Assembly (NCBI GenBank): GCA_965644295.1
Contig: CBFFRP010000146.1
Span: forward strand, 248,001-312,000
Direction: 5' to 3'
Source of the DNA: Paraphysomonas bandaiensis
Taxonomy: Eukaryota; Protista; Chrysophyceae
Length of the DNA stretch: 64,000 nt
Each line of letters begins with the position of its first letter. Position 1 is the stretch's first letter. Shown one piece after another: positions 4,249 to 46,059 of the stretch. Made by a program: the position numbers and the translations under genes. The notes beneath the pieces were generated by a model. The model was not told where the DNA came from and made no database searches. It saw nothing but the letters and a program-made list of their open reading frames with translations.

Positions 4249-4932
4249 ACCTTTGGTATACCCTTAACACTGTGATCTAAGACTACATATAATATAACTG
4301 TGTTTTAGATTTATATTTACTTGAAGCTCAGTCTAACTGTTAATTGGCAATTCAATTATTACCCAAGCCTGACGTATACTGCACTTCATACTCGTGCGTA
4401 CTACTATCATAGTGATTACCAGGCTTGCGTAATAATTAATTGGCAATTACTTGGTGACAGATGTCCAACAATTACTAATCTCAATCATCGAATTATTGAC
4501 AAGGGAGGTAATTAATTGGCTATAATTGCCAATTAATTACCTTCAATTCTATTGCTAGATTTTAGAATAACTTTCTGAACTATAATCTCATTCTAAATTA
4601 ATTGGCAACATTTTTACCAATAATATAATTGAAATGATCACTTCTAAAACCAATTAATTGTTATGCAAGCCTGGTCATTTCAGCCTGAATCAATTTCTCT
4701 AAAATAATACTATAATCATTCACATTATAATATTATCTGTTATTACTGTCTGTTTCTACCACAATGTCGATTGTGTTTTATTAATGAAGACATATAAAAA
4801 AGGTGAATTGTGATATCTGTACAACTGCGGAATAACAAACCTAGTTAGACTGAGCTTCAAGTAACTATAAATCTAAAACACGGTTATATTATATGTAGTC
4901 TTAGATCACAGCGATAAGGGTATACCAAAGGT
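4249..4932. mobile_element. Element bounded by ~90-bp inverted repeats (MITE/foldback-like)
   Basis: 4249-4338 (ACCTTTGGTATACCCTTA...GAAGCTCAGTCTAACT) is a near-perfect reverse complement of 4843-4932. Confidence 0.8.
4420..4673. mobile_element. Nested hAT-like MITE
   Basis: ~24-bp TIRs CAGGCTTGCGTAATAATTAATTGG ... CCAATTAATTGTTATGCAAGCCTG. Flanks GTGATTAC / GTCATTTC (6/8 match) resemble a decayed 8-bp TSD. Confidence 0.65.
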
Positions 4933-4943
4933 TCTTTCACATA

Positions 4944-7108
4944 TCAGGGACAGGTTTCACCATTCTTCCATTCGGAAGTGTTATGAGCAGCTGCGTATAG
5001 AAACAGTTACAGCTGTTTAATACAAGTACTGTACAAATAATATCACGTTAAACAATTTTACAATAAAACACTCAGACAGTTATTTAAAATGGAGATACGA
5101 TGCAACTCACCCACAAGCATATCCATTATATTATGTAGAGTACAAGGTTTAATGATGACTTCATCAGCTCCAGCCGCAAAGAAAGAAGCTCGTTCTTCAG
5201 GCATCGCATTTCCAGTAAGAAATGAAATATACCCCTTATATCCACCCTCTTTAATGAGACGCGTAGCTTCAATGCCATTCATTACGGGCATGTTTACGTC
5301 CATAATTATAACATCAAAAGGGTTATTATCAACAGCCGATGTCCTTACAGCTTCTACAGCTTCCATCCCGTCAGCAGCTTGTGATACAGATCCAACATAT
5401 GAGCATACTAGACGGGATATCATTTTTCGATTCACTGCAGAGTCATCAACAACTAAGACTCGCCCAATTTTAATGTCATTAATTGTGGTGCGTCTTGCAT
5501 CGAAGTTGTTGCGAGAAGTGGATCCAGACTTGGGTGTTGATGCATAAATTTTGGGCGTTTGAGGCAAAAAACGACTCCGCAGAGTCTGGGCTGTGTCGAT
5601 TGCAGTTTCACTGAATCCAGAAATATTTGGCGTTGGCCTCCGAATACGTGGGTTCCGACTTACTTGTCACAAAGGCGTAGAAGTCAACTTGGCCACCAGG
5701 TGGAGTAAACTTAAGTGCATTAGATACAAGATTTCGAAGAACTTGACTGAATTTGCTGACATCGACATGAATATATATATCTTTGTTGGAAATAGAAGGA
5801 TCTATGTGCTTTTCATCCTTGTGACAAAATGATATTTTTTTTTGACGTGCCTAGTACTACATATTAGAATAATGAATTACTAGAGCATACGAGTATTATG
5901 TATCACCAAACGTGTATAAACGGCTTAAGTACCTGAATGTCAAACGGTTCTACCACAGAAGATAGTAGATCGTGTATCTTTATATCCTTCGTATCGAGGT
6001 GCAGATTCCCACCTTCTATTTTGTTTACAAGCAGAAAATCATCCAAAATATTCACTGCTACACAACACGAGTTTTCAATATCTGTAACAATATGCCGTAT
6101 CTCACTCAATGTTGCAGACTCTAGGGATTGTAGTCGACAATTTAACAGTTGTATCCCCATGTAGACTGTATTAAGTGGAGTTCTGAGCTCATGGGAAATA
6201 TAGCTGACAAAATCGCGTTTTGATTGAAGGATGTGCTGAAAATTAAAACAAACGCTGTTAAACATGAAGAACAGGAATAATAAAATAAATAAACATATGC
6301 ACAGCACACCAATAACTCATACGATCGAAACACTCACCTCCGCAACAGATTTTTCGTGTCTCGCCAGTCGTCCAGGGATCACAGTGGCGATAATGCATAT
6401 GAATATATCACCTACGACGGTGTAGGTAGGTTGCTCTAAACCAAACGCCACTACATATTTACAAATAAAATTCAAAACTGACAAAACTACATAGAACGTA
6501 TTAAGGTCTCTCTTTCTCCATAGACGTTTCATACACAGTGCAAGTAGCATGACTTGTGACAAAATGTCACATACAAGCGACGCATGCATCCAGTTGTTAT
6601 TTAAATAGGGAGAATCGAATATATACCACAGTCTCGCTTGTAGAGGAAAAACAGTTAATATTGAAATTGAAAATGTCATGATTTTGGTTCCACTCCCGCA
6701 GCCATCATGAAGAAGGAAACTCAGTAGTGATCCTTTTAGCAAATATTCTCGGCAAAATATACAACACATGCCCACTGATATCGATCGTGCGGAGATGCTG
6801 CTAGTCGCAACATAACAAACGGCATTCGGAACAAAGAGAGCCGAAAAGAGCATCCACTGTGAGAATGTAATCTTCCATGGAAGATAATAGTCCAGAATAG
6901 TATCCAGTAGAAGTGGTAAAGAGGCTGAGATCGCCACCAGTACTAATGTCCGGTGTTCTTTCCAGTTAAAGTTTGATTGAGGGTCGAAATAACTCAAATC
7001 AGCGTCATTGTTAGTAAATATAAGAGGAAAGTATGCCGTTATGCTACATAAAAGAAAGAATAGCAAACAAACCTCTCGTGAGAAGTAAAGAGATAATACA
7101 CGCATCAT
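4944..7108 (-). CDS. Membrane-bound hybrid histidine kinase with truncated HATPase domain (possible pseudokinase or pseudogene)
   Basis: Multi-TM N-terminus (6317-7108); H-box FVSYISHELRTPLN; N-box FSQVLRNLVSNALKFTP (~5700-5750); receiver VLVVDD...IIMDVNMPVMNG...LTG...IKP (5058-5480). No G1/F/G2 boxes seen. Confidence 0.85.
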
Positions 7109-7199
7109 GGATATGTTTCTTTATATCAATATAAGTCTCATTATAGTCATATATATATGAGTCAGTAGGTATGAAACTCGTTATTGTTCTCACACCCCT

Positions 7200-7262
7200 C
7201 ATACTCATACTCATACTCCTCATACTCATACTCCTCATACTCATACTCCTCATACTCATACT
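7200..7262. repeat. Short tandem repeat (ATACTC / ATACTCCTC units)
   Basis: Directly visible tandem array just upstream of the histidine kinase start. Confidence 0.85.
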
Positions 7263-8652
7263 GTATGTTGAATTAAGATATGAAGATATTCGTCACTGGC
7301 AGATGATCACTTCATACAGAGGGAAGTGATCTTCCCCTTCACGGGCATAGGAACTCCCTACGCACTTGTAGAAGTTCTATACACACTACGTATATCGTAC
7401 ATATACCGTCTTGTGTAACAATAAAAGTGCAGTATTTCTACCGTATACAGAGTACACGCACATACTATATTCGATTTTCGACATAAAACAACAGGTTTTT
7501 ATTTGACCACCTTGACTAGACACATAAAAACTGGGTATTTTTAAGTTAGCTGCATTGTTGTTATGGATGTACACTGCTGTACAGTAGCTCTGGTGTTGAG
7601 TGTCCACAAACGGTACATACATATAACAGAAGGATCTAAATCATGGCGCGCTATAAGATAATTCAGAGATGAGACTGAGAGTACACAGGAAGGGCTAACC
7701 CATTGCCCACATAACTACGGACATAAGTTAACCTCGTTAGAATGAGATGTGTTTCATTCAGTACGTATGTTTCTACACGTTTCTCACGAATATGAACAAT
7801 AGGCACTACAGGGCAGGTCTTGGGGACAACATATTGCAATACTATTGTTAGATAGCGTCTCAACAATAATATTGATGGAGTTGTGCAGTATATTGCAATA
7901 TGGTAGTATTGTGATTAAGTAACTAAACACTTGCGTAGATTCCAAACCTACTACACTGCCAGACAACCACTACCTAGTGCTTTTCTAATCACCACTTTCC
8001 TCGTACTCATTCTCTGAGCTATCATTGGTGATGTTATTATCACCAAATTCATTCAAAAGTAATTGAAATATGCATCCAGCCACAAGTGTCGATTAGCTTT
8101 CAGAAACTATGTCATAAGTGTAGTAGAATGCATACTTGTGTGCATCACAGAGATAATAAGTCTAGCTGCGCTGAACCGGCGTTTACGTGTATAGGAAGTA
8201 CTTTTCTCAAGTCGTCGAGCATTATGGCGGTGACATCGGAATTCTGCCGAGCAGTAGGAATTCTATCAGCCACTACATCCGGCGGCCTTTGACTCTTGAT
8301 ACAGGATCTTTCACAGGAACAATATTGATGGAATTTTTGGCCGGTCCACCAATCAGTATATCTTACAATATATTGTTCCCTATGCTGCTACAGGGTAATA
8401 TCACATACAATGTTGACCTGTATGTGAAATTTATGGACTGGCTTAGAACCTGATTCTTATATATATTTCTGGTGATAAACGATCGCAGACCAAACTATTC
8501 ATACTGGCGGTAATTAATCAGTTACTGATAATGATTCAGTGTATGATATCTAATATAAAACAGTAATAGAATTCAGGTCAACAAGTAGCGTAACATATAA
8601 ATCACAGTAAATACAAAAAGGAAAAATACTTCGAATTGCTTTGTACAAAAGA

Positions 8653-40022: not shown

Positions 40023-41369
40023 TATACGACAATTCGACTGCGAAATGTACGACAGTACTGTATATAAGTACTGACACTATCTACGTACAGCAATACATCC
40101 TCAATGAGTCAATCTAAAAATACAAAAACAGCAATTTTCATGTCAAATATCCCAATTTTCAGGTTTAAATCCATCAATAACTGGACATATCCAGACATGC
40201 ATGGACCGTGCGTTAAGGGGCTGGATATACATCCAGAAGAGTACTAGAAGCACCTCTATATGCATCCAGAGGGAATCAAACAATTACTGTCATCTGAAGT
40301 GGTATTTGTAGATCTGTATGATGCACATACAGCATCTAATAGCATTCTATTGCCCCTTATATGAAGCAAGTCATACGGATGCATATACAGTACATCAACA
40401 CCAATATAACAGTCGTATACTATAGTCACTATCATTCTGAAACTTCTGTAGTCATTTTCATTCACAGACCTTGAACTCATGCTTGTTATGTTTACCTTCA
40501 ATCTATACTTTTGTATGCATTCTTCCGTCAGGCGTCTTTTCTTATCAGTATCAGATTAAGGGACGGAAGTGCTACACATGCAGAGAGTATGAGTCAGCAG
40601 TGAATAAAAGCCAGAAAGCGATATGAATATTCGTTTTTCGGGTATTTCTACTTATGAACTTACTATATTTTGCACTATACAATCTTACATATATGTAGTG
40701 TATTGTATCCTTATACTCTGTGATCAATGTATATAAGTGTAGTGTAGCCATTGCACATTTGGAATGGTTATGTGTTACACATGAATCAAGATTTAACGCG
40801 TTCGTGATCGGTATAGCTGCACTGTCATTTCGTGCGACATATATAGCTGTCCTGTAGCGACTGGTTGATTAATATTATTACTTGCTACACTACATGTACT
40901 TGGATGCATTTCTACTACCTATCTTGTACACGACACCAAGACCAAGACCACTTTTCATTATGGATGATACCATGACTTTGAATGACACTTAGTTCGTAGT
41001 TCGGTAATTAGACTGAATGAAAACTACCTTTTAAACGAATAATAATATAATGTATAAAATCGGGATAATTTTAACAGCTGTACCCAATGCCTAATCTTCT
41101 CTAATATCACAAATAATACAGCAAGAATTATAAGTGAAGCTAAACGTGCACGCAAACACCGAATATTTTGAATGATTAATATCGAACTTTAGTTACTTCA
41201 TACACTCTAGTTTAAAGAAGAAAGCGACGAATGAAATGAAACAAAGGAAAAAGTACAAATAAGTACCTCTACCACATAAGTAGTTCAAAACAGTACAATA
41301 AACTAAAGTTACATAACAAACTCTCCCCTGTCAGTGGCGTACGCAACAAGAATGTGAGCCATTTCAGAC

Positions 41370-44300
41370 TTATGCAATCCGAAACTTATGAGACACAACA
41401 GACTTGCGTTTGGTCAACTCGTCGAAACCTCCATTGGACAAAGCCGCTGCCGTGTTTCCTGAGTGTCCAACTCCACTCCAGCAAACTTGCGCATGAACGT
41501 CATTACACCAGTTAACGAAAACAGTTCCAGAGTCAGAGTTTGAGATGAAATCATCTACAAGTTTTTTGTTTTGCGTGAACACAGAAGTCGTCAGGCCGTA
41601 ATAGGCATGGTTTATGTAACCCAATGCTTCTTCATCAGATTCCACAGTTATAACCGGCAACACGGGGCCGAATACTTCTTGCTGCAACACGCACATGTCT
41701 GGAGATACGTGAGTGAGAAGTGTGGGTTCAATGAAAGCACATGTGTCTCGCTCAACAATACGGCCGCCAGTGATTACCTGCGCACCCTGGGACACGGCAT
41801 CATCCACCATTGCCTTCAGAGCAGTCACAGCTTTCCTGCCTCCATGCAGTGGCCCGAGTGTGGTTTTCTCGTCAAGAGGGTCGCCTAAAACATGAGACTC
41901 CATAGCTTCCTTAGATTTACGCAAAAACTCGTTTTCAACAGACTTGTGAACGTAGGCCCTCTTAATGGAACAGCATGACTGACCGGAGTTATGAAGTCGG
42001 CCAATATTAATTACCATGTTCACAGCATGGTCAATATCCGCGTCTGCCGCAATATAAACCGCATCGCTACCACCTAACTCCACAGAAACACGTATGAATG
42101 GGTTTCGAAGAAATGTATTCGCAGCACGACGTGCGACTTGCTTATATATCGCTTGTCCACCCAATACTGATCCAGTGAAGACAACATGATGAATATCACC
42201 CTTTTGAATGATGTCATTCGATGTTTCAATGCCGACATTAACGTGCTGACACAAGCCTGATATTCCTCCCATTGTATTGAATACTTTTTGGAAAAACTCA
42301 CCCACACATGGGGTTGTCTCGTGCTTTAAAATAACCGCATTTCCAGAGAGCAGCGCTGGACCAATACTGTTTAGAGCAGTAAAAAATGGATAGTTCCACG
42401 GCGCTATTGTGTAAATGACACCTTTGGCCGGCTTTTGAATCAAGTATGAGAAATCTCCCTCTTCCGTGTAGGCAGGAGTAATTGCTTGAGTACTCTCTTG
42501 GGCGATCTTAGCAAGATATCGCAATTTACCCACTCCAGCTTCTATTTCCTGGCGAGCAGCAGATACGGTTTTTCCAACTTCTTTAGCAAACTGAATAACC
42601 ACTGAGTCCATGGTGGAGATGATGACATCAAGCTGTTCTGTGAATACAGCAATACGCTGAGATGGTTTCAGCAACTCCCACTGTTTCTGTGCCACATGCG
42701 CATTAGATATTTTCTCTGTAACTGTTTCAAAGCTCTCATAGACATATCGGCCTACAACGTTTCCTGTGTATGGACTGAGAATAGAGTTTTCTTCTTCGTC
42801 AGGAGGACGATTTTGTGGTATAGAGTGGCCACCATTTTGACAGTTCGCCACAGCTTCGGTTGCTGCGGAAACAAACCTGTCAATCTGGCCACGGGTAGTT
42901 AGAAACGAAGTCACTAAACGACATTCCACAGGGGCTGTACTAAGTACCAGAAAACGATACTCCGCACGAAGCGCCTCCAATATCTCTACTGGACATGAAA
43001 ATATCACCATATTGGTCTCCACAGGACGTGTGATGGTAAACCCCGCCACTTTCCCCAAACAATCGCGTAGATATATGGCACAGTCATGAGCATGGGTTGC
43101 AATGCGAAACCACAGTTCAGACTGACCTAGCCACTCTGTAAACTGTGCCGCTGCGAATCTAACCTTCGATAGAAGTTGCATACCTTGCTTACGTACATAT
43201 TTGAAATCAGGGTTTGGTTTTCGGAACAAGACAACTTCAGCCCCTTCCAAGCCACTTTTAGTTCCCCCAAAGGATACCACATCGACCCCTAAATCAAAAG
43301 TGAGCCCTTTAAATGTGGTGTCCAATCTAGCTACAGCATTGGCAAGTCGAGACCCGTCAACATGCACCAAAAACGAATGATTGTGAGCAAAATTTACGAG
43401 TTTACGAATCTCATCTGCAGTGTATATTTGGCCGAATTCGTTAGGCTGAGTAATTGATATAATTCCCGGTTGAGAACGATGAGGAATAGGAAGCAACTGC
43501 ACAGCAAAAGGAAGAAGAGATTCGGGGGTCAGTTTTCCATCATGTGTGTAAATTGGTATTAGCTTACACCCACAGAAACGTTCAGGGGCACCACATTCGT
43601 CGGTCGCAAGATGGGAGACTGACGAGCACAGAATTGTCTGGTAAGGACGTATCAGAGATGATATAGCAAGCACATTTGCGGCAGTGCCTGTCCCTACAAT
43701 ATATGCATCCACATCATCTCCAAAATGAGATTTGAGGCATCTTATCGCCGACGCTGTGTACTTATCGCCTCCATAGGCTAGAGTTGCATCGATATTACAA
43801 CGCTGCATAGCGAGCATGACATCGGGGTGGACACCAGACGCGTTATCGCTCGAGAGACAAGCAGATTCATCAACATTGTCAACCAAAAGGCGGTGAGCAG
43901 GATCGCCACTAGGCAATAGAGGAATAATTTGCAGTTTGTGACCTCCTACTCTCCGTGCGCCCTCAGCAGTAACAACGACTGTGTCTGATAGACCAACGGG
44001 TCCTCTGTGTGGACCTTCGCTCACCTCAAACCATGGAATAAAGTGAAACACCATATTCTCTTCAAAAGGAATATGATTATTCATAGATATGGAGAAACAT
44101 GCATCTCCCCACCCAGCGTTACCGGCAGGAGCAGTGGCTGTTCCTCCGACAGTGTAGCCAAGCCGCGCGGACGACACTCCGTTGAAAGTATTGGAGTTCA
44201 TGATCCGCTTGGCAACCGCATCCACTTCGCTGGGCTTCACACCTGGCTTCATCATTGGAAGGCATGTATCGAAAACTTCATTGATCTTTTGCTCCGCCTC

Positions 44301-45249
44301 CATGATCCAGTCAGGGAGTGTGTCCTCGCCGTCAGATAGAAGAAATGCTGTTTGCATTCGCGGGGCGTGATGACCCTTATGGTTTCCAGACAACTCTATG
44401 AAGACAATACCACTATCCACTCCACAACGCTCATAAACCTCCCATGTTCCATGGCCGGAGGGATCCGAAGAACGGATAATTGGCATATACGCAGGCTCAC
44501 TGCAACCTGCTTTGAACATTGCTTGCAGGGCGGTTAAGTAGATGTCGCTCAAAAGTGCACCACGTCTACTGGCCGCAAGACCAGCGACAATACCCACTTT
44601 GGTCTGCTCCATAGCTGTTGCAATATTAGTGAGTTCGAATGGAGTTTTCTTTAGACGAATCTTCTCCACAAGTCCATTGCTATCCACAAATCGTACCTGG
44701 GGATTGCTTTCCTGCAAAGTCATGTGCTCCCTGACGGAGACCTGATTGAGGTCCAGGCCCACATTTGCAGTTCCCCCATCCTTGGAGCCAAGAACAGACT
44801 CCAACGCCTTCGCAAATACTTTTGTGGGGTCCGCAGAATCAAGACAAGACCACCACTGTGAAACCCACGTATATTTTTCGACCTGGAAAAATATTAAATA
44901 CGTTAAATATGTACATTTGACATACCAAGTTGGTTTCCAGTAGTCTTGCAACCATCACAGGGCGGCCTTCCAGGGGAACTAACAAAGTTTGCGGTTGAGA
45001 ATCTCCAAGAGTATGAAATCCAGTCATGTATCGCAAATCCTCATTTTTAACACACAATACATCCAAACCCAAACTCGCCATCGCCTCTCTCACAGTCTGC
45101 AATCTGGATTTATACTCATCCACTGGTGCCTCAAGAGCAGCAATACAGTGACTGGCTCTTCCAAAATTCATATCATCACATGGGAGATCTCCAACAATAA
45201 CTCCAGGATGAATAAGTGTACCACGATGAAATTCATGAACTGCTTCCAT
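41370..45249 (-). CDS. Trifunctional fusion: DoeA/EutD-like M24 hydrolase + low-specificity L-threonine aldolase + aldehyde dehydrogenase (~1278 aa)
   Basis: Exon 1 45249-44926, 43-nt GT-AG intron, exon 2 44882-41370, in frame. M24: EYKSRL...YMTGF...RLKKTPFEL...GHGTW...FIELSG...RLGYTVG...MVFHF...LSDTVVVT. Aldolase: SDNASG, YGGD, GTAAN, DECGAPE, HVDGSRLANA, SFGGTK. ALDH: APWNYP, FTGS, VELGG, NSGQSCC, EVFGP. Confidence 0.93.
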
Positions 45250-46059
45250 CTCTGTGTTGTTTTTGAGGGTTGTTTAGTATTGATGTATATGGATTTGACT
45301 CGGTGTTAGTATGGTGTGTTGTATGATTGATATTTATATAGTCGTAATGCACACAGCCATGCATTGGTATGATGTCAGCAGAACAACAAGAGTACAGGCA
45401 TCTCATATCCGCTCCATGTTCCTATGAATGTTTAGGTGTGTCTTGTGATTTCATTGGTCGAGATCCTGATAGGATACACAGTACAGCGTATATATACAGT
45501 ACATATGGACAGAGATCCATCCCACTATACATACATACATGCTACACCCCTATATACACCTACGGTACACCCATGCACTTCTACACCTAACGTTATCATA
45601 CTGAAACACAACGTACAATAGAGTACAGCTTTGTTGACTTTTCGGGTTTGCAACAAAAAACGGTAGTTTTGTCATTATTTTGAATATCGTTACTCGCTAA
45701 AACCAACAAGAGTATAAAAATCCATATTTTCATGATTGAAACTCTCAACAAAAATGGATGCCTTGTATATACCGTACAGCAGTATATCATGTATACGGGA
45801 GTTTGTGCACGGTATAGTGCAGAGTATGGTGTTGATATGTAACGACACTATCCACCTATCTCTGCATGTAACTTGCATATATACTAGTATATACATACTG
45901 CTGCACGATAAGTGACTCCAATTACACTCATTGCACATCACTGTCGTATGAGGATACATTGTAAGTGAGTCCACAGTATACACGTCGTGGTATCACTCTA
46001 CACCCCGTGAATGTATCTACTCATTAATACGTGCTGTTGAGATATTATTTGTACCAAAT

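What the first reader, a model, noticed from the sequence alone, without database searches (positions are those of the whole stretch)
41370..45249. Three-enzyme fusion: ectoine-hydrolase-like + threonine aldolase + aldehyde dehydrogenase, a possible one-gene hydroxyectoine catabolic pathway
Seen: one reading frame (single 43-nt intron) joins an M24-fold domain (~45249-43915), a PLP low-specificity threonine aldolase with its Schiff-base Lys (SFGGTK; ~43855-42850) and an ALDH with catalytic Glu/Cys (VELGG, GQSCC; ~42790-41370). The M24 domain lacks the usual metal-ligand motifs of prolidases (DxG, HGxG, EPG). It instead has GHGTW, FIELSG..HAP, RLGYTVG..WGD and MVFHF, which match my recollection of the metal-independent ectoine hydrolase DoeA/EutD pattern (HLTW, FFEIAG..YH.P, RxGYxIG..WGE, MTFHF). 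Known: EutD opens ectoine and 5-hydroxyectoine to N-acetyl-(hydroxy)diaminobutyrate, and threonine aldolases cleave beta-hydroxy-alpha-amino acids to glycine plus an aldehyde. Inference: hydroxyectoine -> N-gamma-acetyl-3-hydroxy-DABA -> glycine + acetamidoacetaldehyde -> N-acetylglycine, with the aldehyde channelled inside one protein. This differs from the bacterial Eut/Doe route and would let a bacterivorous protist exploit prey osmolytes. The aldolase step needs a free alpha-amine, so the gamma-acetyl isomer would have to be produced. The gene is intron-poor with bacterial-type domains, hinting at horizontally acquired genes that fused. I know of no described protein with this architecture.
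Basis: partly seen in the sequence, partly recalled or inferred. Interest (0 to 1): 0.93.

Follow-up and report, generated by a model that had tools for sequence, protein, structure and literature searches.

The report
Three-enzyme fusion, likely hydroxyectoine breakdown
A marine microbial eukaryote expresses one 1278-residue protein that joins an ectoine-hydrolase-like ring opener, a threonine aldolase and an aldehyde dehydrogenase, and comparison with other genomes suggests a previously undescribed way of breaking the osmolyte (hydroxy)ectoine down to glycine.

Summary
One minus-strand gene (exons 45249-44926 and 44882-41370, with a 43-nt GT..AG intron) encodes 1278 residues: a DoeA-like M24 domain, an L-threonine aldolase and an ALDH. 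Spliced RNA contigs from two independent studies cover the gene. The M24 domain is closest to ectoine hydrolases by HMM, solved structures, fold and tree. It shares their replaced metal ligands but scores far below the curated cut-offs. It lies in a clade next to the DoeA_2 ectoine hydrolases, and 13 of the 23 sampled members of that clade are fused to PLP enzymes that act on beta-substituted alpha-amino acids. These partners are two unrelated threonine-aldolase families or a diaminopropionate-ammonia-lyase type. Two bacterial loci place an M24-aldolase fusion beside an M20 N-deacylase and an aminoaldehyde-type ALDH. All three testable carriers of the M24-aldolase fusion also encode an ectoine hydroxylase (EctD) with its signature motif: this genome, a Coxiellaceae MAG (the only one of 63 genomes in its order) and Pharyngomonas kirbyi. 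No EctABC was found in this genome, nor EctC in the MAG. The best reading (about 0.55) is (hydroxy)ectoine, ring opening, retro-aldol cleavage to glycine, then aldehyde oxidation. The regiochemistry and the substrate are untested. No second trifunctional protein was found.

The parts
45250..45342 (-). 5' untranslated region (at least)
   Evidence: Transcript contig L004 aligns up to 45342. An X8 contig reaches 45359.
44926..45249 (-). Exon 1, codons 1-108 (N-terminal part of the Creatinase_N lobe)
   Evidence: ORF and sequence. Creatinase_N scores 26.2 bits and ectoine_DoeA_2 43.3 bits.
44883..44925 (-). 43-nt spliceosomal intron (GT..AG)
   Evidence: Sequence. Skipped in L004 and in RNA contigs of runs X8 and X11 (table 5).
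41370..44882 (-). Exon 2, codons 109-1278 plus the stop codon
   Evidence: ORF and translation check.
43917..45132 (-). DoeA-like M24 hydrolase domain (residues about 40-430, interrupted by the intron)
   Evidence: Best NCBIfam match is NF038259 ectoine_DoeA_2 (127.1 + 43.3 bits), then TIGR02993. Best PDB sequence match is DoeA 6twj, E 7e-22. The AF2 model has pLDDT 89.6 and its top four Foldseek hits are EutD/DoeA. Tree placement.
44040..44456 (-). Active-site motif block shared with DoeA: GHGTW, FIELSG, GHHAP, RLGYTVG, GWGD, MVFHF
   Evidence: Coordinates, aligned to DoeA. The metal-ligand replacements (E, P, Y) relative to prolidase are shown. E271, Y351, W366 and H388 are invariant, and H252 and R348 nearly so, across 40 fusion and DoeA_2 sequences.
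42843..43874 (-). PLP-dependent L-threonine aldolase domain (residues about 445-788)
   Evidence: PDB L-threonine aldolases 7yvr, 9l9g and 5vye and phenylserine aldolase 1v72 match at E 7e-63 to 2e-52 over the full length. Pfam Beta_elim_lyase.
43257..43274 (-). SFGGTK, with the Schiff-base lysine (Lys650)
   Evidence: Aligned to SFGATK of L-threonine aldolase 7yvr. Coordinates.
41397..42797 (-). Aldehyde dehydrogenase domain (residues about 804-1270)
   Evidence: Pfam Aldedh, 342 bits, profile positions 6-461 of 461. Many PDB ALDHs match at E 1e-59 to 1e-43.
41970..42083 (-). ALDH catalytic motifs VELGG (general-base Glu) and GQSCC (nucleophile Cys)
   Evidence: Coordinates. Aligned to ELGG and GQNCC of a bacterial ALDH.
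41166..41369 (-). 3' untranslated region (at least)
   Evidence: L004 aligns down to 41166. An X15 contig reaches 41181.

Best explanation
The gene encodes a trifunctional catabolic enzyme for a ring-opened, beta-hydroxylated ectoine, most likely 5-hydroxyectoine. The substrate could be taken up as such or made from imported ectoine by the genome's own EctD. In step 1 the DoeA-like M24 domain hydrolyses the cyclic amidine to N-acetyl-3-hydroxy-2,4-diaminobutyrate. In step 2 the threonine-aldolase domain cleaves the beta-hydroxy-alpha-amino acid by a retro-aldol reaction into glycine and a two-carbon amino-aldehyde. In step 3 the ALDH domain oxidises that aldehyde. Two sub-routes fit equally well. 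In the first, the ring opens to the N-gamma-acetyl isomer, the aldolase acts directly, and the products are glycine plus N-acetylglycine, which an M20 aminoacylase then deacetylates. In the second, the N-alpha-acetyl isomer is first deacetylated by a separate M20 enzyme, the aldolase gives glycine plus aminoacetaldehyde, and the ALDH makes a second glycine. Either way the net products are two glycine and one acetate. What is shown: the gene structure, its transcription as one mRNA, the domain identities, the intact catalytic motifs, the phylogenetic position, the recurrent fusions, the operon neighbours and the co-occurrence with EctD. What is inferred: the substrate, the regiochemistry, the order of the deacetylation step and any channelling.
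For: (1) By every measure the M24 domain is nearest to ectoine hydrolases. NCBIfam gives ectoine_DoeA_2 127+43 bits and eutD 64+26 bits, against PepQ 21 bits. PDB gives DoeA 81 bits against prolidase 35 bits. The top four Foldseek hits are EutD/DoeA. The metal-ligand replacements are DoeA's. (2) In the tree, a clade of 23 rows (SH-aLRT 95) holds all 8 TA-fusion rows and all 5 DAPAL fusions. It sits beside the DoeA_2 clade inside a 50-row clade (98), with canonical EutD as outgroup. Members of the DoeA_2 clade lie next to ectABC (L018, L037, L078, L084) or directly upstream of an ALDH (about 35 of 80 loci). (3) Sister M24 domains are fused to two unrelated aldolase families: P0001 and P0003 to the Pseudomonas-type L-TA, and P0004 to the L-allo-TA/ltaE type (303 bits to 1jg8; 21-28% identity to the others). 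This points to selection for retro-aldol chemistry on the M24 product. (4) Two bacterial loci combine an M24-TA fusion with an M20 N-deacylase (ACY1-like or ArgE/DapE-like) and an aminoaldehyde-type ALDH (PuuC- or BADH-like). (5) EctD with its signature motif is present in all three carriers that could be tested. In G000 it is L009:6713-7801, FSWHSDFETWHCEDGMP, 227 bits to EctD 3emr. In the Coxiellaceae MAG it is FPWHSDFETWHVEDGVP, and that MAG is the only one of 63 genomes in its order with either EctD or the M24 part. In Pharyngomonas kirbyi the fusion is P0073 and the EctD is P0267. (6) EctA, EctB and EctC were not found in G000, and EctC was not found in the MAG, so EctD there is not part of a detectable biosynthetic set. 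(7) (4S,5S)-5-hydroxyectoine would open to a (2S,3S), L-allo-type beta-hydroxy amino acid, which fits low-specificity and allo-type aldolases. This is my own CIP reasoning, an inference. (8) The literature states that the fate of hydroxy-ADABA/hydroxy-DABA and the roles of EutABC are unknown (PMC8739950).
Against: The M24 domain scores far below the curated ectoine-hydrolase cut-offs (about 170 against 575 and 613) and belongs to a separate, uncharacterised clade, so its substrate may have shifted. Characterised EutD yields the N-alpha-acetyl isomers, which an aldolase cannot bind (PMC8739950). The fusion lacks a deacetylase, and no canonical EutE was found in G000. The ALDH domain is only 27-28% identical to the operon ALDHs, so it is not orthologous to them. 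The EctD co-occurrence rests on three lineages. The absences of EctABC come from six-frame searches of draft assemblies, and for PF06339 the positive control did not ring. The DAPAL-type partners could indicate a beta-amino rather than a beta-hydroxy product. There is no biochemical evidence.
Confidence: 0.55

Rival explanations
1. The logic is the same but the substrate differs. The M24 domain opens or deacylates another cyclic amidine, guanidine or N-acyl amino acid whose product is a beta-substituted alpha-amino acid. The aldolase and the ALDH finish the job. Ectoine is only the nearest characterised relative's substrate.
For: The M24 clade is distinct from the DoeA_2 clade and from canonical EutD, and it scores far below both cut-offs. 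Clade members are also fused to diaminopropionate-ammonia-lyase-type enzymes (NF006058 at 254-357 bits), whose model substrate has a beta-amino group. The closest bacterial homologue, P0043 (47% identity), lies in a cluster with MTTB, two Amdase/EutA-like genes and flavoprotein/FeS genes rather than a classical eut cluster.
Against: This reading does not explain the EctD co-occurrence in three lineages, including 1 of 63 Coxiellales genomes. Clusters of the P0043 type have themselves been proposed as ectoine catabolic clusters on sequence grounds (PMC13188858). Putative catalytic residues are conserved with the DoeA_2 proteins.
Confidence: 0.27
2. This is generic threonine or peptide catabolism. 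The aldolase splits L-threonine into glycine and acetaldehyde, and the ALDH oxidises acetaldehyde to acetate. The M24 domain is a peptidase or amidohydrolase that merely supplies amino acids, or it has a separate role.
For: The aldolase domain is about 45% identical to characterised L-threonine aldolases. The ALDH shows no specific subfamily signature. Threonine aldolase followed by acetaldehyde oxidation is established chemistry.
Against: The M24 domain lacks three of the metal ligands that M24 peptidases need. Repeated independent fusion of this particular M24 clade to aldolases of two families, the M20 N-deacylase in both operons and the link with EctD are not expected for plain threonine catabolism.
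Confidence: 0.12
3. The fusion is an artefact: a misassembly, a read-through of adjacent genes or bacterial contamination.
For: None was found. The concern arises only because the domains look bacterial and the gene has a single intron.
Against: The reading frame is continuous in the genome. A spliceosomal intron is removed in RNA. Spliced contigs from two independent studies (the MMETSP contig and run X8) cover the gene, and marine polyA metatranscriptomes hold parts of it. The neighbours are ordinary eukaryotic genes.
Confidence: 0.01

Closest known systems
Ectoine/5-hydroxyectoine hydrolase EutD (DoeA), EC 3.5.4.44, with the EutE deacetylase (Ruegeria pomeroyi, Halomonas elongata; PDB 6twj/6twk/6yo9)
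   Same: Both have the two-lobed M24 pita-bread fold. It is the best sequence and fold match. The replaced metal ligands and motif block are the same. The proposed first step, ring opening of the tetrahydropyrimidine, is the same.
   Different: Identity is about 22-28%, far below the TIGR02993 cut-off. The domain is fused to PLP and ALDH domains instead of working with EutE, and no EutE was found in this genome. The downstream route is a retro-aldol cleavage to glycine, not transamination and oxidation to aspartate. A different ring-opening regiochemistry may be required.
NCBIfam NF038259 'ectoine_DoeA_2' hydrolases (e.g. Photobacterium, Thalassolituus, Kytococcus loci L069, L072, L087)
   Same: It is the nearest curated family and the sister clade in the tree. 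Invariant residues are shared. The family is linked to an adjacent ALDH and to ectABC in bacteria.
   Different: True members score 680-790 bits, whereas the domain here scores about 170. Members are stand-alone enzymes followed by a DoeC-like ALDH and an aminotransferase, not an aldolase.
Bacterial M24-threonine aldolase fusions with neighbouring M20 deacylase and ALDH (Coxiellaceae MAG P0142/L019; metagenome contig L021, P0086)
   Same: They carry the same three activities plus a deacylase in one locus. The Coxiellaceae genome also carries EctD.
   Different: In these loci the ALDH is a separate gene of another subfamily, 27-28% identical. Their M24 domains belong to the other sub-branch of the fusion clade. 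None of them is characterised.
PutA (proline dehydrogenase fused to P5C dehydrogenase)
   Same: It is also a catabolic multi-domain enzyme that ends in an ALDH acting on a reactive aldehyde made by an upstream domain. It appeared among the weak hits.
   Different: The upstream domains and substrate are unrelated. PutA is an analogy for channelling only.
Fused ectoine biosynthetic enzymes of protists (EctA-EctC, and EctA-EctC-EctD in Azadinium spinosum; PMC4987115, PMC5796728)
   Same: These are bacterial-type ectoine genes that were acquired and fused in microbial eukaryotes.
   Different: They are biosynthetic. No eukaryotic ectoine catabolic enzyme is described in the papers I could search.

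Membership tests
Ectoine hydrolase EutD/DoeA (TIGR02993, equivalog) | Score at or above the curated cut-off (613 bits) | tested here: not met
   64.2 bits (exon 2 part) plus 26.2 bits (exon 1). Vibrionaceae EutD used as controls score 613-636 bits.
Ectoine hydrolase EutD/DoeA (TIGR02993, equivalog) | Creatinase_N plus M24 pita-bread fold | tested here: met
   Pfam. The AF2 model has pLDDT 89.6. Foldseek ranks 1-4 are 6yo9, 6twk and 6twj with TM about 0.82.
Ectoine hydrolase EutD/DoeA (TIGR02993, equivalog) | DoeA-type replacement of M24 metal ligands and the shared motif block | tested here: met
   E271, P282 and Y351 stand in place of Asp, Asp and His. The same residues occur in DoeA.
Ectoine hydrolase EutD/DoeA (TIGR02993, equivalog) | Partner deacetylase EutE/DoeB in the genome | tested here: not met
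   The only hit to TIGR02994 in G000 is a 30-bit fragment. An M20 homologue exists instead.
Ectoine hydrolase EutD/DoeA (TIGR02993, equivalog) | Hydrolysis of ectoine or 5-hydroxyectoine | not testable with these tools
   This needs an enzyme assay.
ectoine_DoeA_2 (NF038259) | Score at or above the cut-off (575 bits) | tested here: not met
   127.1 + 43.3 bits. It is the best-scoring family but far below the cut-off. True members score 680-790 bits.
ectoine_DoeA_2 (NF038259) | Placement inside the DoeA_2 clade | tested here: not met
   The domain falls in a neighbouring 23-row clade (95) within a shared 50-row clade (98) (quick IQ-TREE).
Xaa-Pro peptidase / prolidase (M24B) | Five metal-binding residues (Asp, Asp, His, Glu, Glu) | tested here: not met
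   The first three align to Glu, Pro and Tyr. The PepQ model scores 21 bits against a cut-off of 630.
L-threonine aldolase, Pseudomonas/phenylserine-aldolase type (PDB 7yvr, 5vye, 1v72) | Full-length similarity, with the PLP lysine and the Asp/Arg of HxDGxR conserved | tested here: met
   E 7e-63 over residues 445-788. SFGGTK aligns with SFGATK, and HVDGSR with HMDGAR.
Low-specificity L-threonine aldolase LtaE (NF007825) | Score at or above the cut-off (312 bits) | tested here: not met
   31.9 bits. The domain belongs to the other aldolase family.
Aldehyde dehydrogenase superfamily (PF00171) | Full-length domain with the catalytic Cys, the general-base Glu and the GSxxxG NAD motif | tested here: met
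   342 bits, profile positions 6-461 of 461. GQSCC, VELGG and FTGSVLGG are present. No NCBIfam equivalog cut-off is reached.
Ectoine hydroxylase EctD (partner gene, G000:C271:6713-7801) | Consensus signature F-x-W-H-S-D-F-E-T-W-H-x-E-D-G-M/L-P | tested here: met
   FSWHSDFETWHCEDGMP. The consensus is as quoted in PMC4987115. The protein scores 227 bits to EctD 3emr.
Ectoine hydroxylase EctD (partner gene, G000:C271:6713-7801) | TIGR02408 score at or above the cut-off (336.5 bits) | tested here: inconclusive
   The six-frame match is split by an insertion into 199.7 + 73.9 bits. The whole protein was not scored on its own.

The most novel reading that the evidence does not exclude
EctD works here as a catabolic enzyme. 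Hydroxylating C5 of imported ectoine creates the beta-hydroxy group that allows a retro-aldol cut. On this reading, EctD plus the M24-aldolase(-ALDH) module and an M20 deacylase form a self-contained route from ectoine to two glycine and one acetate. This route would have spread horizontally among marine and halophilic protists and intracellular bacteria, and in this organism it was condensed into one polypeptide. It would be the first ectoine catabolic pathway in eukaryotes, and it would answer how hydroxyectoine carbon can be dismantled without EutABC.
Probability: 0.35. Interest if true: 0.85.

Novelty: new variant of a known kind. Interest (0 to 1): 0.78.

Why it matters
Ectoine and hydroxyectoine are abundant, nitrogen-rich osmolytes in marine and saline habitats. 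Their bacterial breakdown is only partly understood. The literature says that the fate of hydroxy-ADABA/hydroxy-DABA and the roles of EutABC are unknown (PMC8739950). Eukaryotic catabolism of these compounds is not described in the papers I could search. This gene, its relatives and the two bacterial operons give a concrete, testable alternative: ring opening followed by an aldolase cut to glycine. They also suggest a second, catabolic role for ectoine hydroxylase. The protein is expressed in cultures and is seen in marine polyA metatranscriptomes, so it may matter for osmolyte cycling between bacteria and protists. As one polypeptide carrying three sequential activities, it is also a convenient object for enzymology and for biocatalysis of beta-hydroxy-alpha-amino acids.

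Tried and rejected
- Earlier scan notes near the locus returned nothing, and 'ectoine' occurs in no note of this genome. The list of horizontal-transfer candidates did not bear on this gene.
- The structural paper on EutD (Mais et al. 2020) could not be fetched by DOI. Ligand-contact residues were therefore not checked against the publication. I used only alignments to the PDB sequences.
- The 'thrA' gene in the Gram-positive putative ectoine clusters turned out to be homoserine dehydrogenase, not a threonine aldolase, so I dropped that lead.
- The fused ALDH is not orthologous to the operon ALDHs. Identity is only 27-28%.
- The search for further trifunctional proteins found only the organism's own protein, both from the N-terminal words and from the ALDH region.
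- Among the best 80 of 418 hits in 185,579 species genomes, only one M24-aldolase fusion (Coxiellaceae) appeared.
- The neighbours in the window (an Arb2-kinase, a JmjC protein, a p25-alpha protein and a PAE-like protein) are unrelated, so there is no eukaryotic gene cluster.
- EctA, EctB, EctC and EutE were not found in G000. These are six-frame searches of a draft assembly, and the PF06339 control did not ring, so absence is not proven.
- The organism could not be named with the tools at hand.


Full report
**Gene structure and expression**

The region holds one minus-strand gene. Exon 1 runs 45249-44926 (108 codons). A 43-nt GT..AG intron lies at 44925-44883. Exon 2 runs 44882-41370. The spliced reading frame gives 1278 residues and a single terminal stop.

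A protein identical at all but three residues (P0001) is on record from an MMETSP transcriptome. Its 4136-nt transcript contig (L004) aligns to the window at 99.3-99.8% in two blocks that omit exactly the intron. The alignment runs from 45342 to 41166, so it includes both untranslated regions.

Contigs of public runs repeat this result. In run X8, from another study, one 3947-nt contig covers 41224-44880 joined to 44924-45212. Run X11 shows the same joint. Contigs from X11, X12 and a marine polyA metatranscriptome (X15) bridge the aldolase-ALDH boundary. The fusion is therefore a real, spliced, single mRNA of a marine microbial eukaryote. The genome is 62.6 Mb and holds one copy of the gene. 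The neighbouring genes are ordinary eukaryotic ones.

**The three domains**

Pfam finds Creatinase_N + Peptidase_M24, then Beta_elim_lyase, then Aldedh.

- **Aldolase domain.** It matches solved L-threonine aldolases of the Pseudomonas/phenylserine-aldolase type at E 7e-63 over its whole length. The Schiff-base lysine (SFGGTK) and the HVDGSR motif are in place.
- **ALDH domain.** It is full length, with the Cys and Glu motifs and the NAD motif, but it has no specific subfamily assignment.
- **M24 domain.** Its best curated match is NF038259 ectoine_DoeA_2 (127 + 43 bits), then TIGR02993 EutD (64 + 26 bits). Prolidase models reach only about 21 bits. Among solved structures, Halomonas elongata DoeA is best by sequence (E 7e-22, against 7e-08 for prolidases). 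A confident AlphaFold model (pLDDT 89.6) has the EutD/DoeA entries as its top four Foldseek matches, with prolidases and creatinases ranking below them.

The residues that bind metals in M24 peptidases are replaced (Asp to Glu, Asp to Pro, His to Tyr), exactly as in DoeA. The observation and the recalled resemblance are both confirmed. However, the scores are far below the curated cut-offs (575 and 613 bits), so by that test the domain is not a member of either ectoine-hydrolase family.

**Position of the M24 domain among its relatives**

An exhaustive HMMER search returned 1392 relatives. Several of the longer ones are fusions. One set is M24 plus aldolase: P0002/P0040, P0003, P0004, P0073, P0086, P0108 and P0142. 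The other set is M24 plus a diaminopropionate-ammonia-lyase-type PLP enzyme: P0058, P0070, P0107, P0129 and P0143. P0070 also carries a EutA-like domain.

The carriers include:
- Pharyngomonas kirbyi, a halophile
- Effrenium voratum
- Chromera velia
- a Coxiellaceae MAG
- unnamed eukaryotic metagenome contigs

Crypthecodinium cohnii has a close unfused copy.

I fetched canonical Vibrionaceae EutD as an outgroup and 80 bacterial loci. In a maximum-likelihood tree of 81 M24 domains, all 13 fusion rows fall in one clade of 23 rows (support 95). That clade lies next to the DoeA_2 clade inside a well-supported group of 50 rows (98).

Members of the DoeA_2 clade score above or close to the curated cut-off. 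They lie next to ectABC (L018, L037, L078, L084) or directly upstream of an ALDH, often with an EctB-like aminotransferase nearby. The closest bacterial homologue of the window's domain, P0043 (47% identity), sits in a cluster with a second M24 gene and two EutA-like genes. A recent paper proposes clusters of this kind, on sequence grounds, as ectoine catabolic clusters (PMC13188858).

**Evidence that the product is a beta-hydroxy amino acid derived from hydroxyectoine**

First, the aldolase partner was recruited at least twice from unrelated families. P0004, whose M24 domain is sister to that of P0003, carries an L-allo-threonine-aldolase/LtaE-type domain (303 bits to 1jg8). That domain is only 21-28% identical to the other aldolase domains.

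Second, two bacterial loci place an M24-aldolase fusion beside two further genes. One is an M20 N-deacylase, ACY1-like in L021 and ArgE/DapE-like in the Coxiellaceae MAG. The other is an aminoaldehyde-type ALDH, BADH-like or PuuC-like. So the three activities of the window's protein, plus an N-deacylation step, are linked in bacteria as well.

Third, the window's genome encodes an ectoine hydroxylase at G000:C271:6713-7801. It has the signature FSWHSDFETWHCEDGMP and scores 227 bits to EctD 3emr. EctA, EctB and EctC were not found.

The Coxiellaceae MAG also has a lone EctD, with FPWHSDFETWHVEDGVP. It is the only one of 63 genomes of its order with EctD, and the only one with the M24 part. EctC was not found in it.

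Pharyngomonas kirbyi has both the fusion (P0073) and an EctD with the signature (P0267).

Fourth, (4S,5S)-5-hydroxyectoine would open to a (2S,3S), allo-type 3-hydroxy-2,4-diaminobutyrate skeleton. That is the kind of substrate these aldolases cleave. This point is my own stereochemical reasoning, not a tool result.

**Most likely mechanism**

Hydroxyectoine is either imported or made from imported ectoine by EctD. The M24 domain opens the ring. The aldolase releases glycine and a two-carbon amino-aldehyde. The ALDH oxidises that aldehyde.

Two sub-routes remain open. An ACY1-like M20 enzyme would then hydrolyse the N-acetylglycine. In the alternative route, the N-alpha-acetyl isomer is formed, which is the known EutD product (PMC8739950). 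A separate M20 enzyme deacetylates it. The aldolase then yields aminoacetaldehyde, and the ALDH converts that to a second glycine.

The direct fusion of this M24 clade to PLP enzymes that need a free alpha-amine mildly favours the first route. The ArgE-like deacylase and the known EutD chemistry favour the second. The genome has an M20 homologue but no canonical EutE. Either way the net products are two glycine and one acetate.

**Comparison with what is known, and novelty**

The nearest characterised system is the EutD/EutE (DoeA/DoeB) pathway. That pathway leads through diaminobutyrate to aspartate. For hydroxyectoine it needs EutABC, whose activities are unknown (PMC8739950).

The window's protein shares the first-step fold and active-site pattern. 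It fails the family cut-offs, lacks EutE, and continues with different chemistry. Protists are known to carry, and even to fuse, ectoine biosynthetic genes (PMC4987115, PMC5796728). I found no paper that links an ectoine hydrolase to a threonine aldolase or that describes ectoine catabolism in eukaryotes.

No second M24-aldolase-ALDH protein was found among 5.8 billion clusters, within the limits of those searches. I rate the finding as a new variant of a known kind of pathway, built from known folds in an undescribed arrangement.

**Caveats**

- Nothing here is biochemical.
- The tree was built with the quick method.
- The EctD association rests on three lineages.
- Absences come from six-frame searches of draft assemblies.
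- The DAPAL-type partners could mean that members of the clade handle other substrates.
- A plain threonine-to-acetate reading of the aldolase-ALDH pair cannot be excluded. It does not account for the M24 partner, the deacylase or EctD.

Noticed in passing
G000:C271:4641-7801 (locus L009): The EctD gene (6713-7801, +) lies head to head with an MFS/UNC-93-like transporter gene (4641-5987, -). They share an intergenic region of about 725 bp. The transporter could be an ectoine importer.
   Followed up: partly
P0058/P0190 (Effrenium voratum), P0070 (Chromera velia), P0107, P0129, P0143: These are DoeA-like M24 domains fused to diaminopropionate-ammonia-lyase-type PLP enzymes. The Chromera protein also carries a EutA-like/arylmalonate-decarboxylase domain and a DHHC domain, and may be a merged gene model. 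This looks like a second, dehydratase-type solution for the same M24 product.
   Followed up: partly
L018:6674-9170 and 11 of the 80 bacterial loci (e.g. L034, L048, L051, L060, L063): A Cys/Met-metabolism PLP enzyme gene (65-70% identical between loci) lies next to a DoeA_2-like M24 gene in Bdellovibrionota, Waddliaceae, Anaerolineae and Trueperaceae. In L018 it directly follows ask-ectA-ectB-ectC. Its role is unknown.
   Followed up: no
P0005 (654 aa, 101-kb ENA contig): A short-chain dehydrogenase is fused to an aldolase domain 42% identical to the one in the window. This is another fusion of the aldolase with a redox enzyme.
   Followed up: no
P0318, P0319 (875-879 aa): These proteins have a C-terminal ALDH 40% identical to the window's ALDH domain. 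Their N-terminal half of about 400 residues has no Pfam family.
   Followed up: no
L104:3327-9664 (Coxiellaceae MAG, beside its EctD): Three large ORFs without obvious families (1404, 225 and 467 aa; proline- and alanine-rich tails) flank the lone EctD gene, next to the ribosomal protein operon. They look like effectors.
   Followed up: no
window 41370-45249 compared with P0001: The genome and the MMETSP transcript differ at 11 nucleotides and 3 residues (T630A, T724S, Q1140K). The same variants recur in runs of several studies, which suggests strain-level polymorphism.
   Followed up: partly
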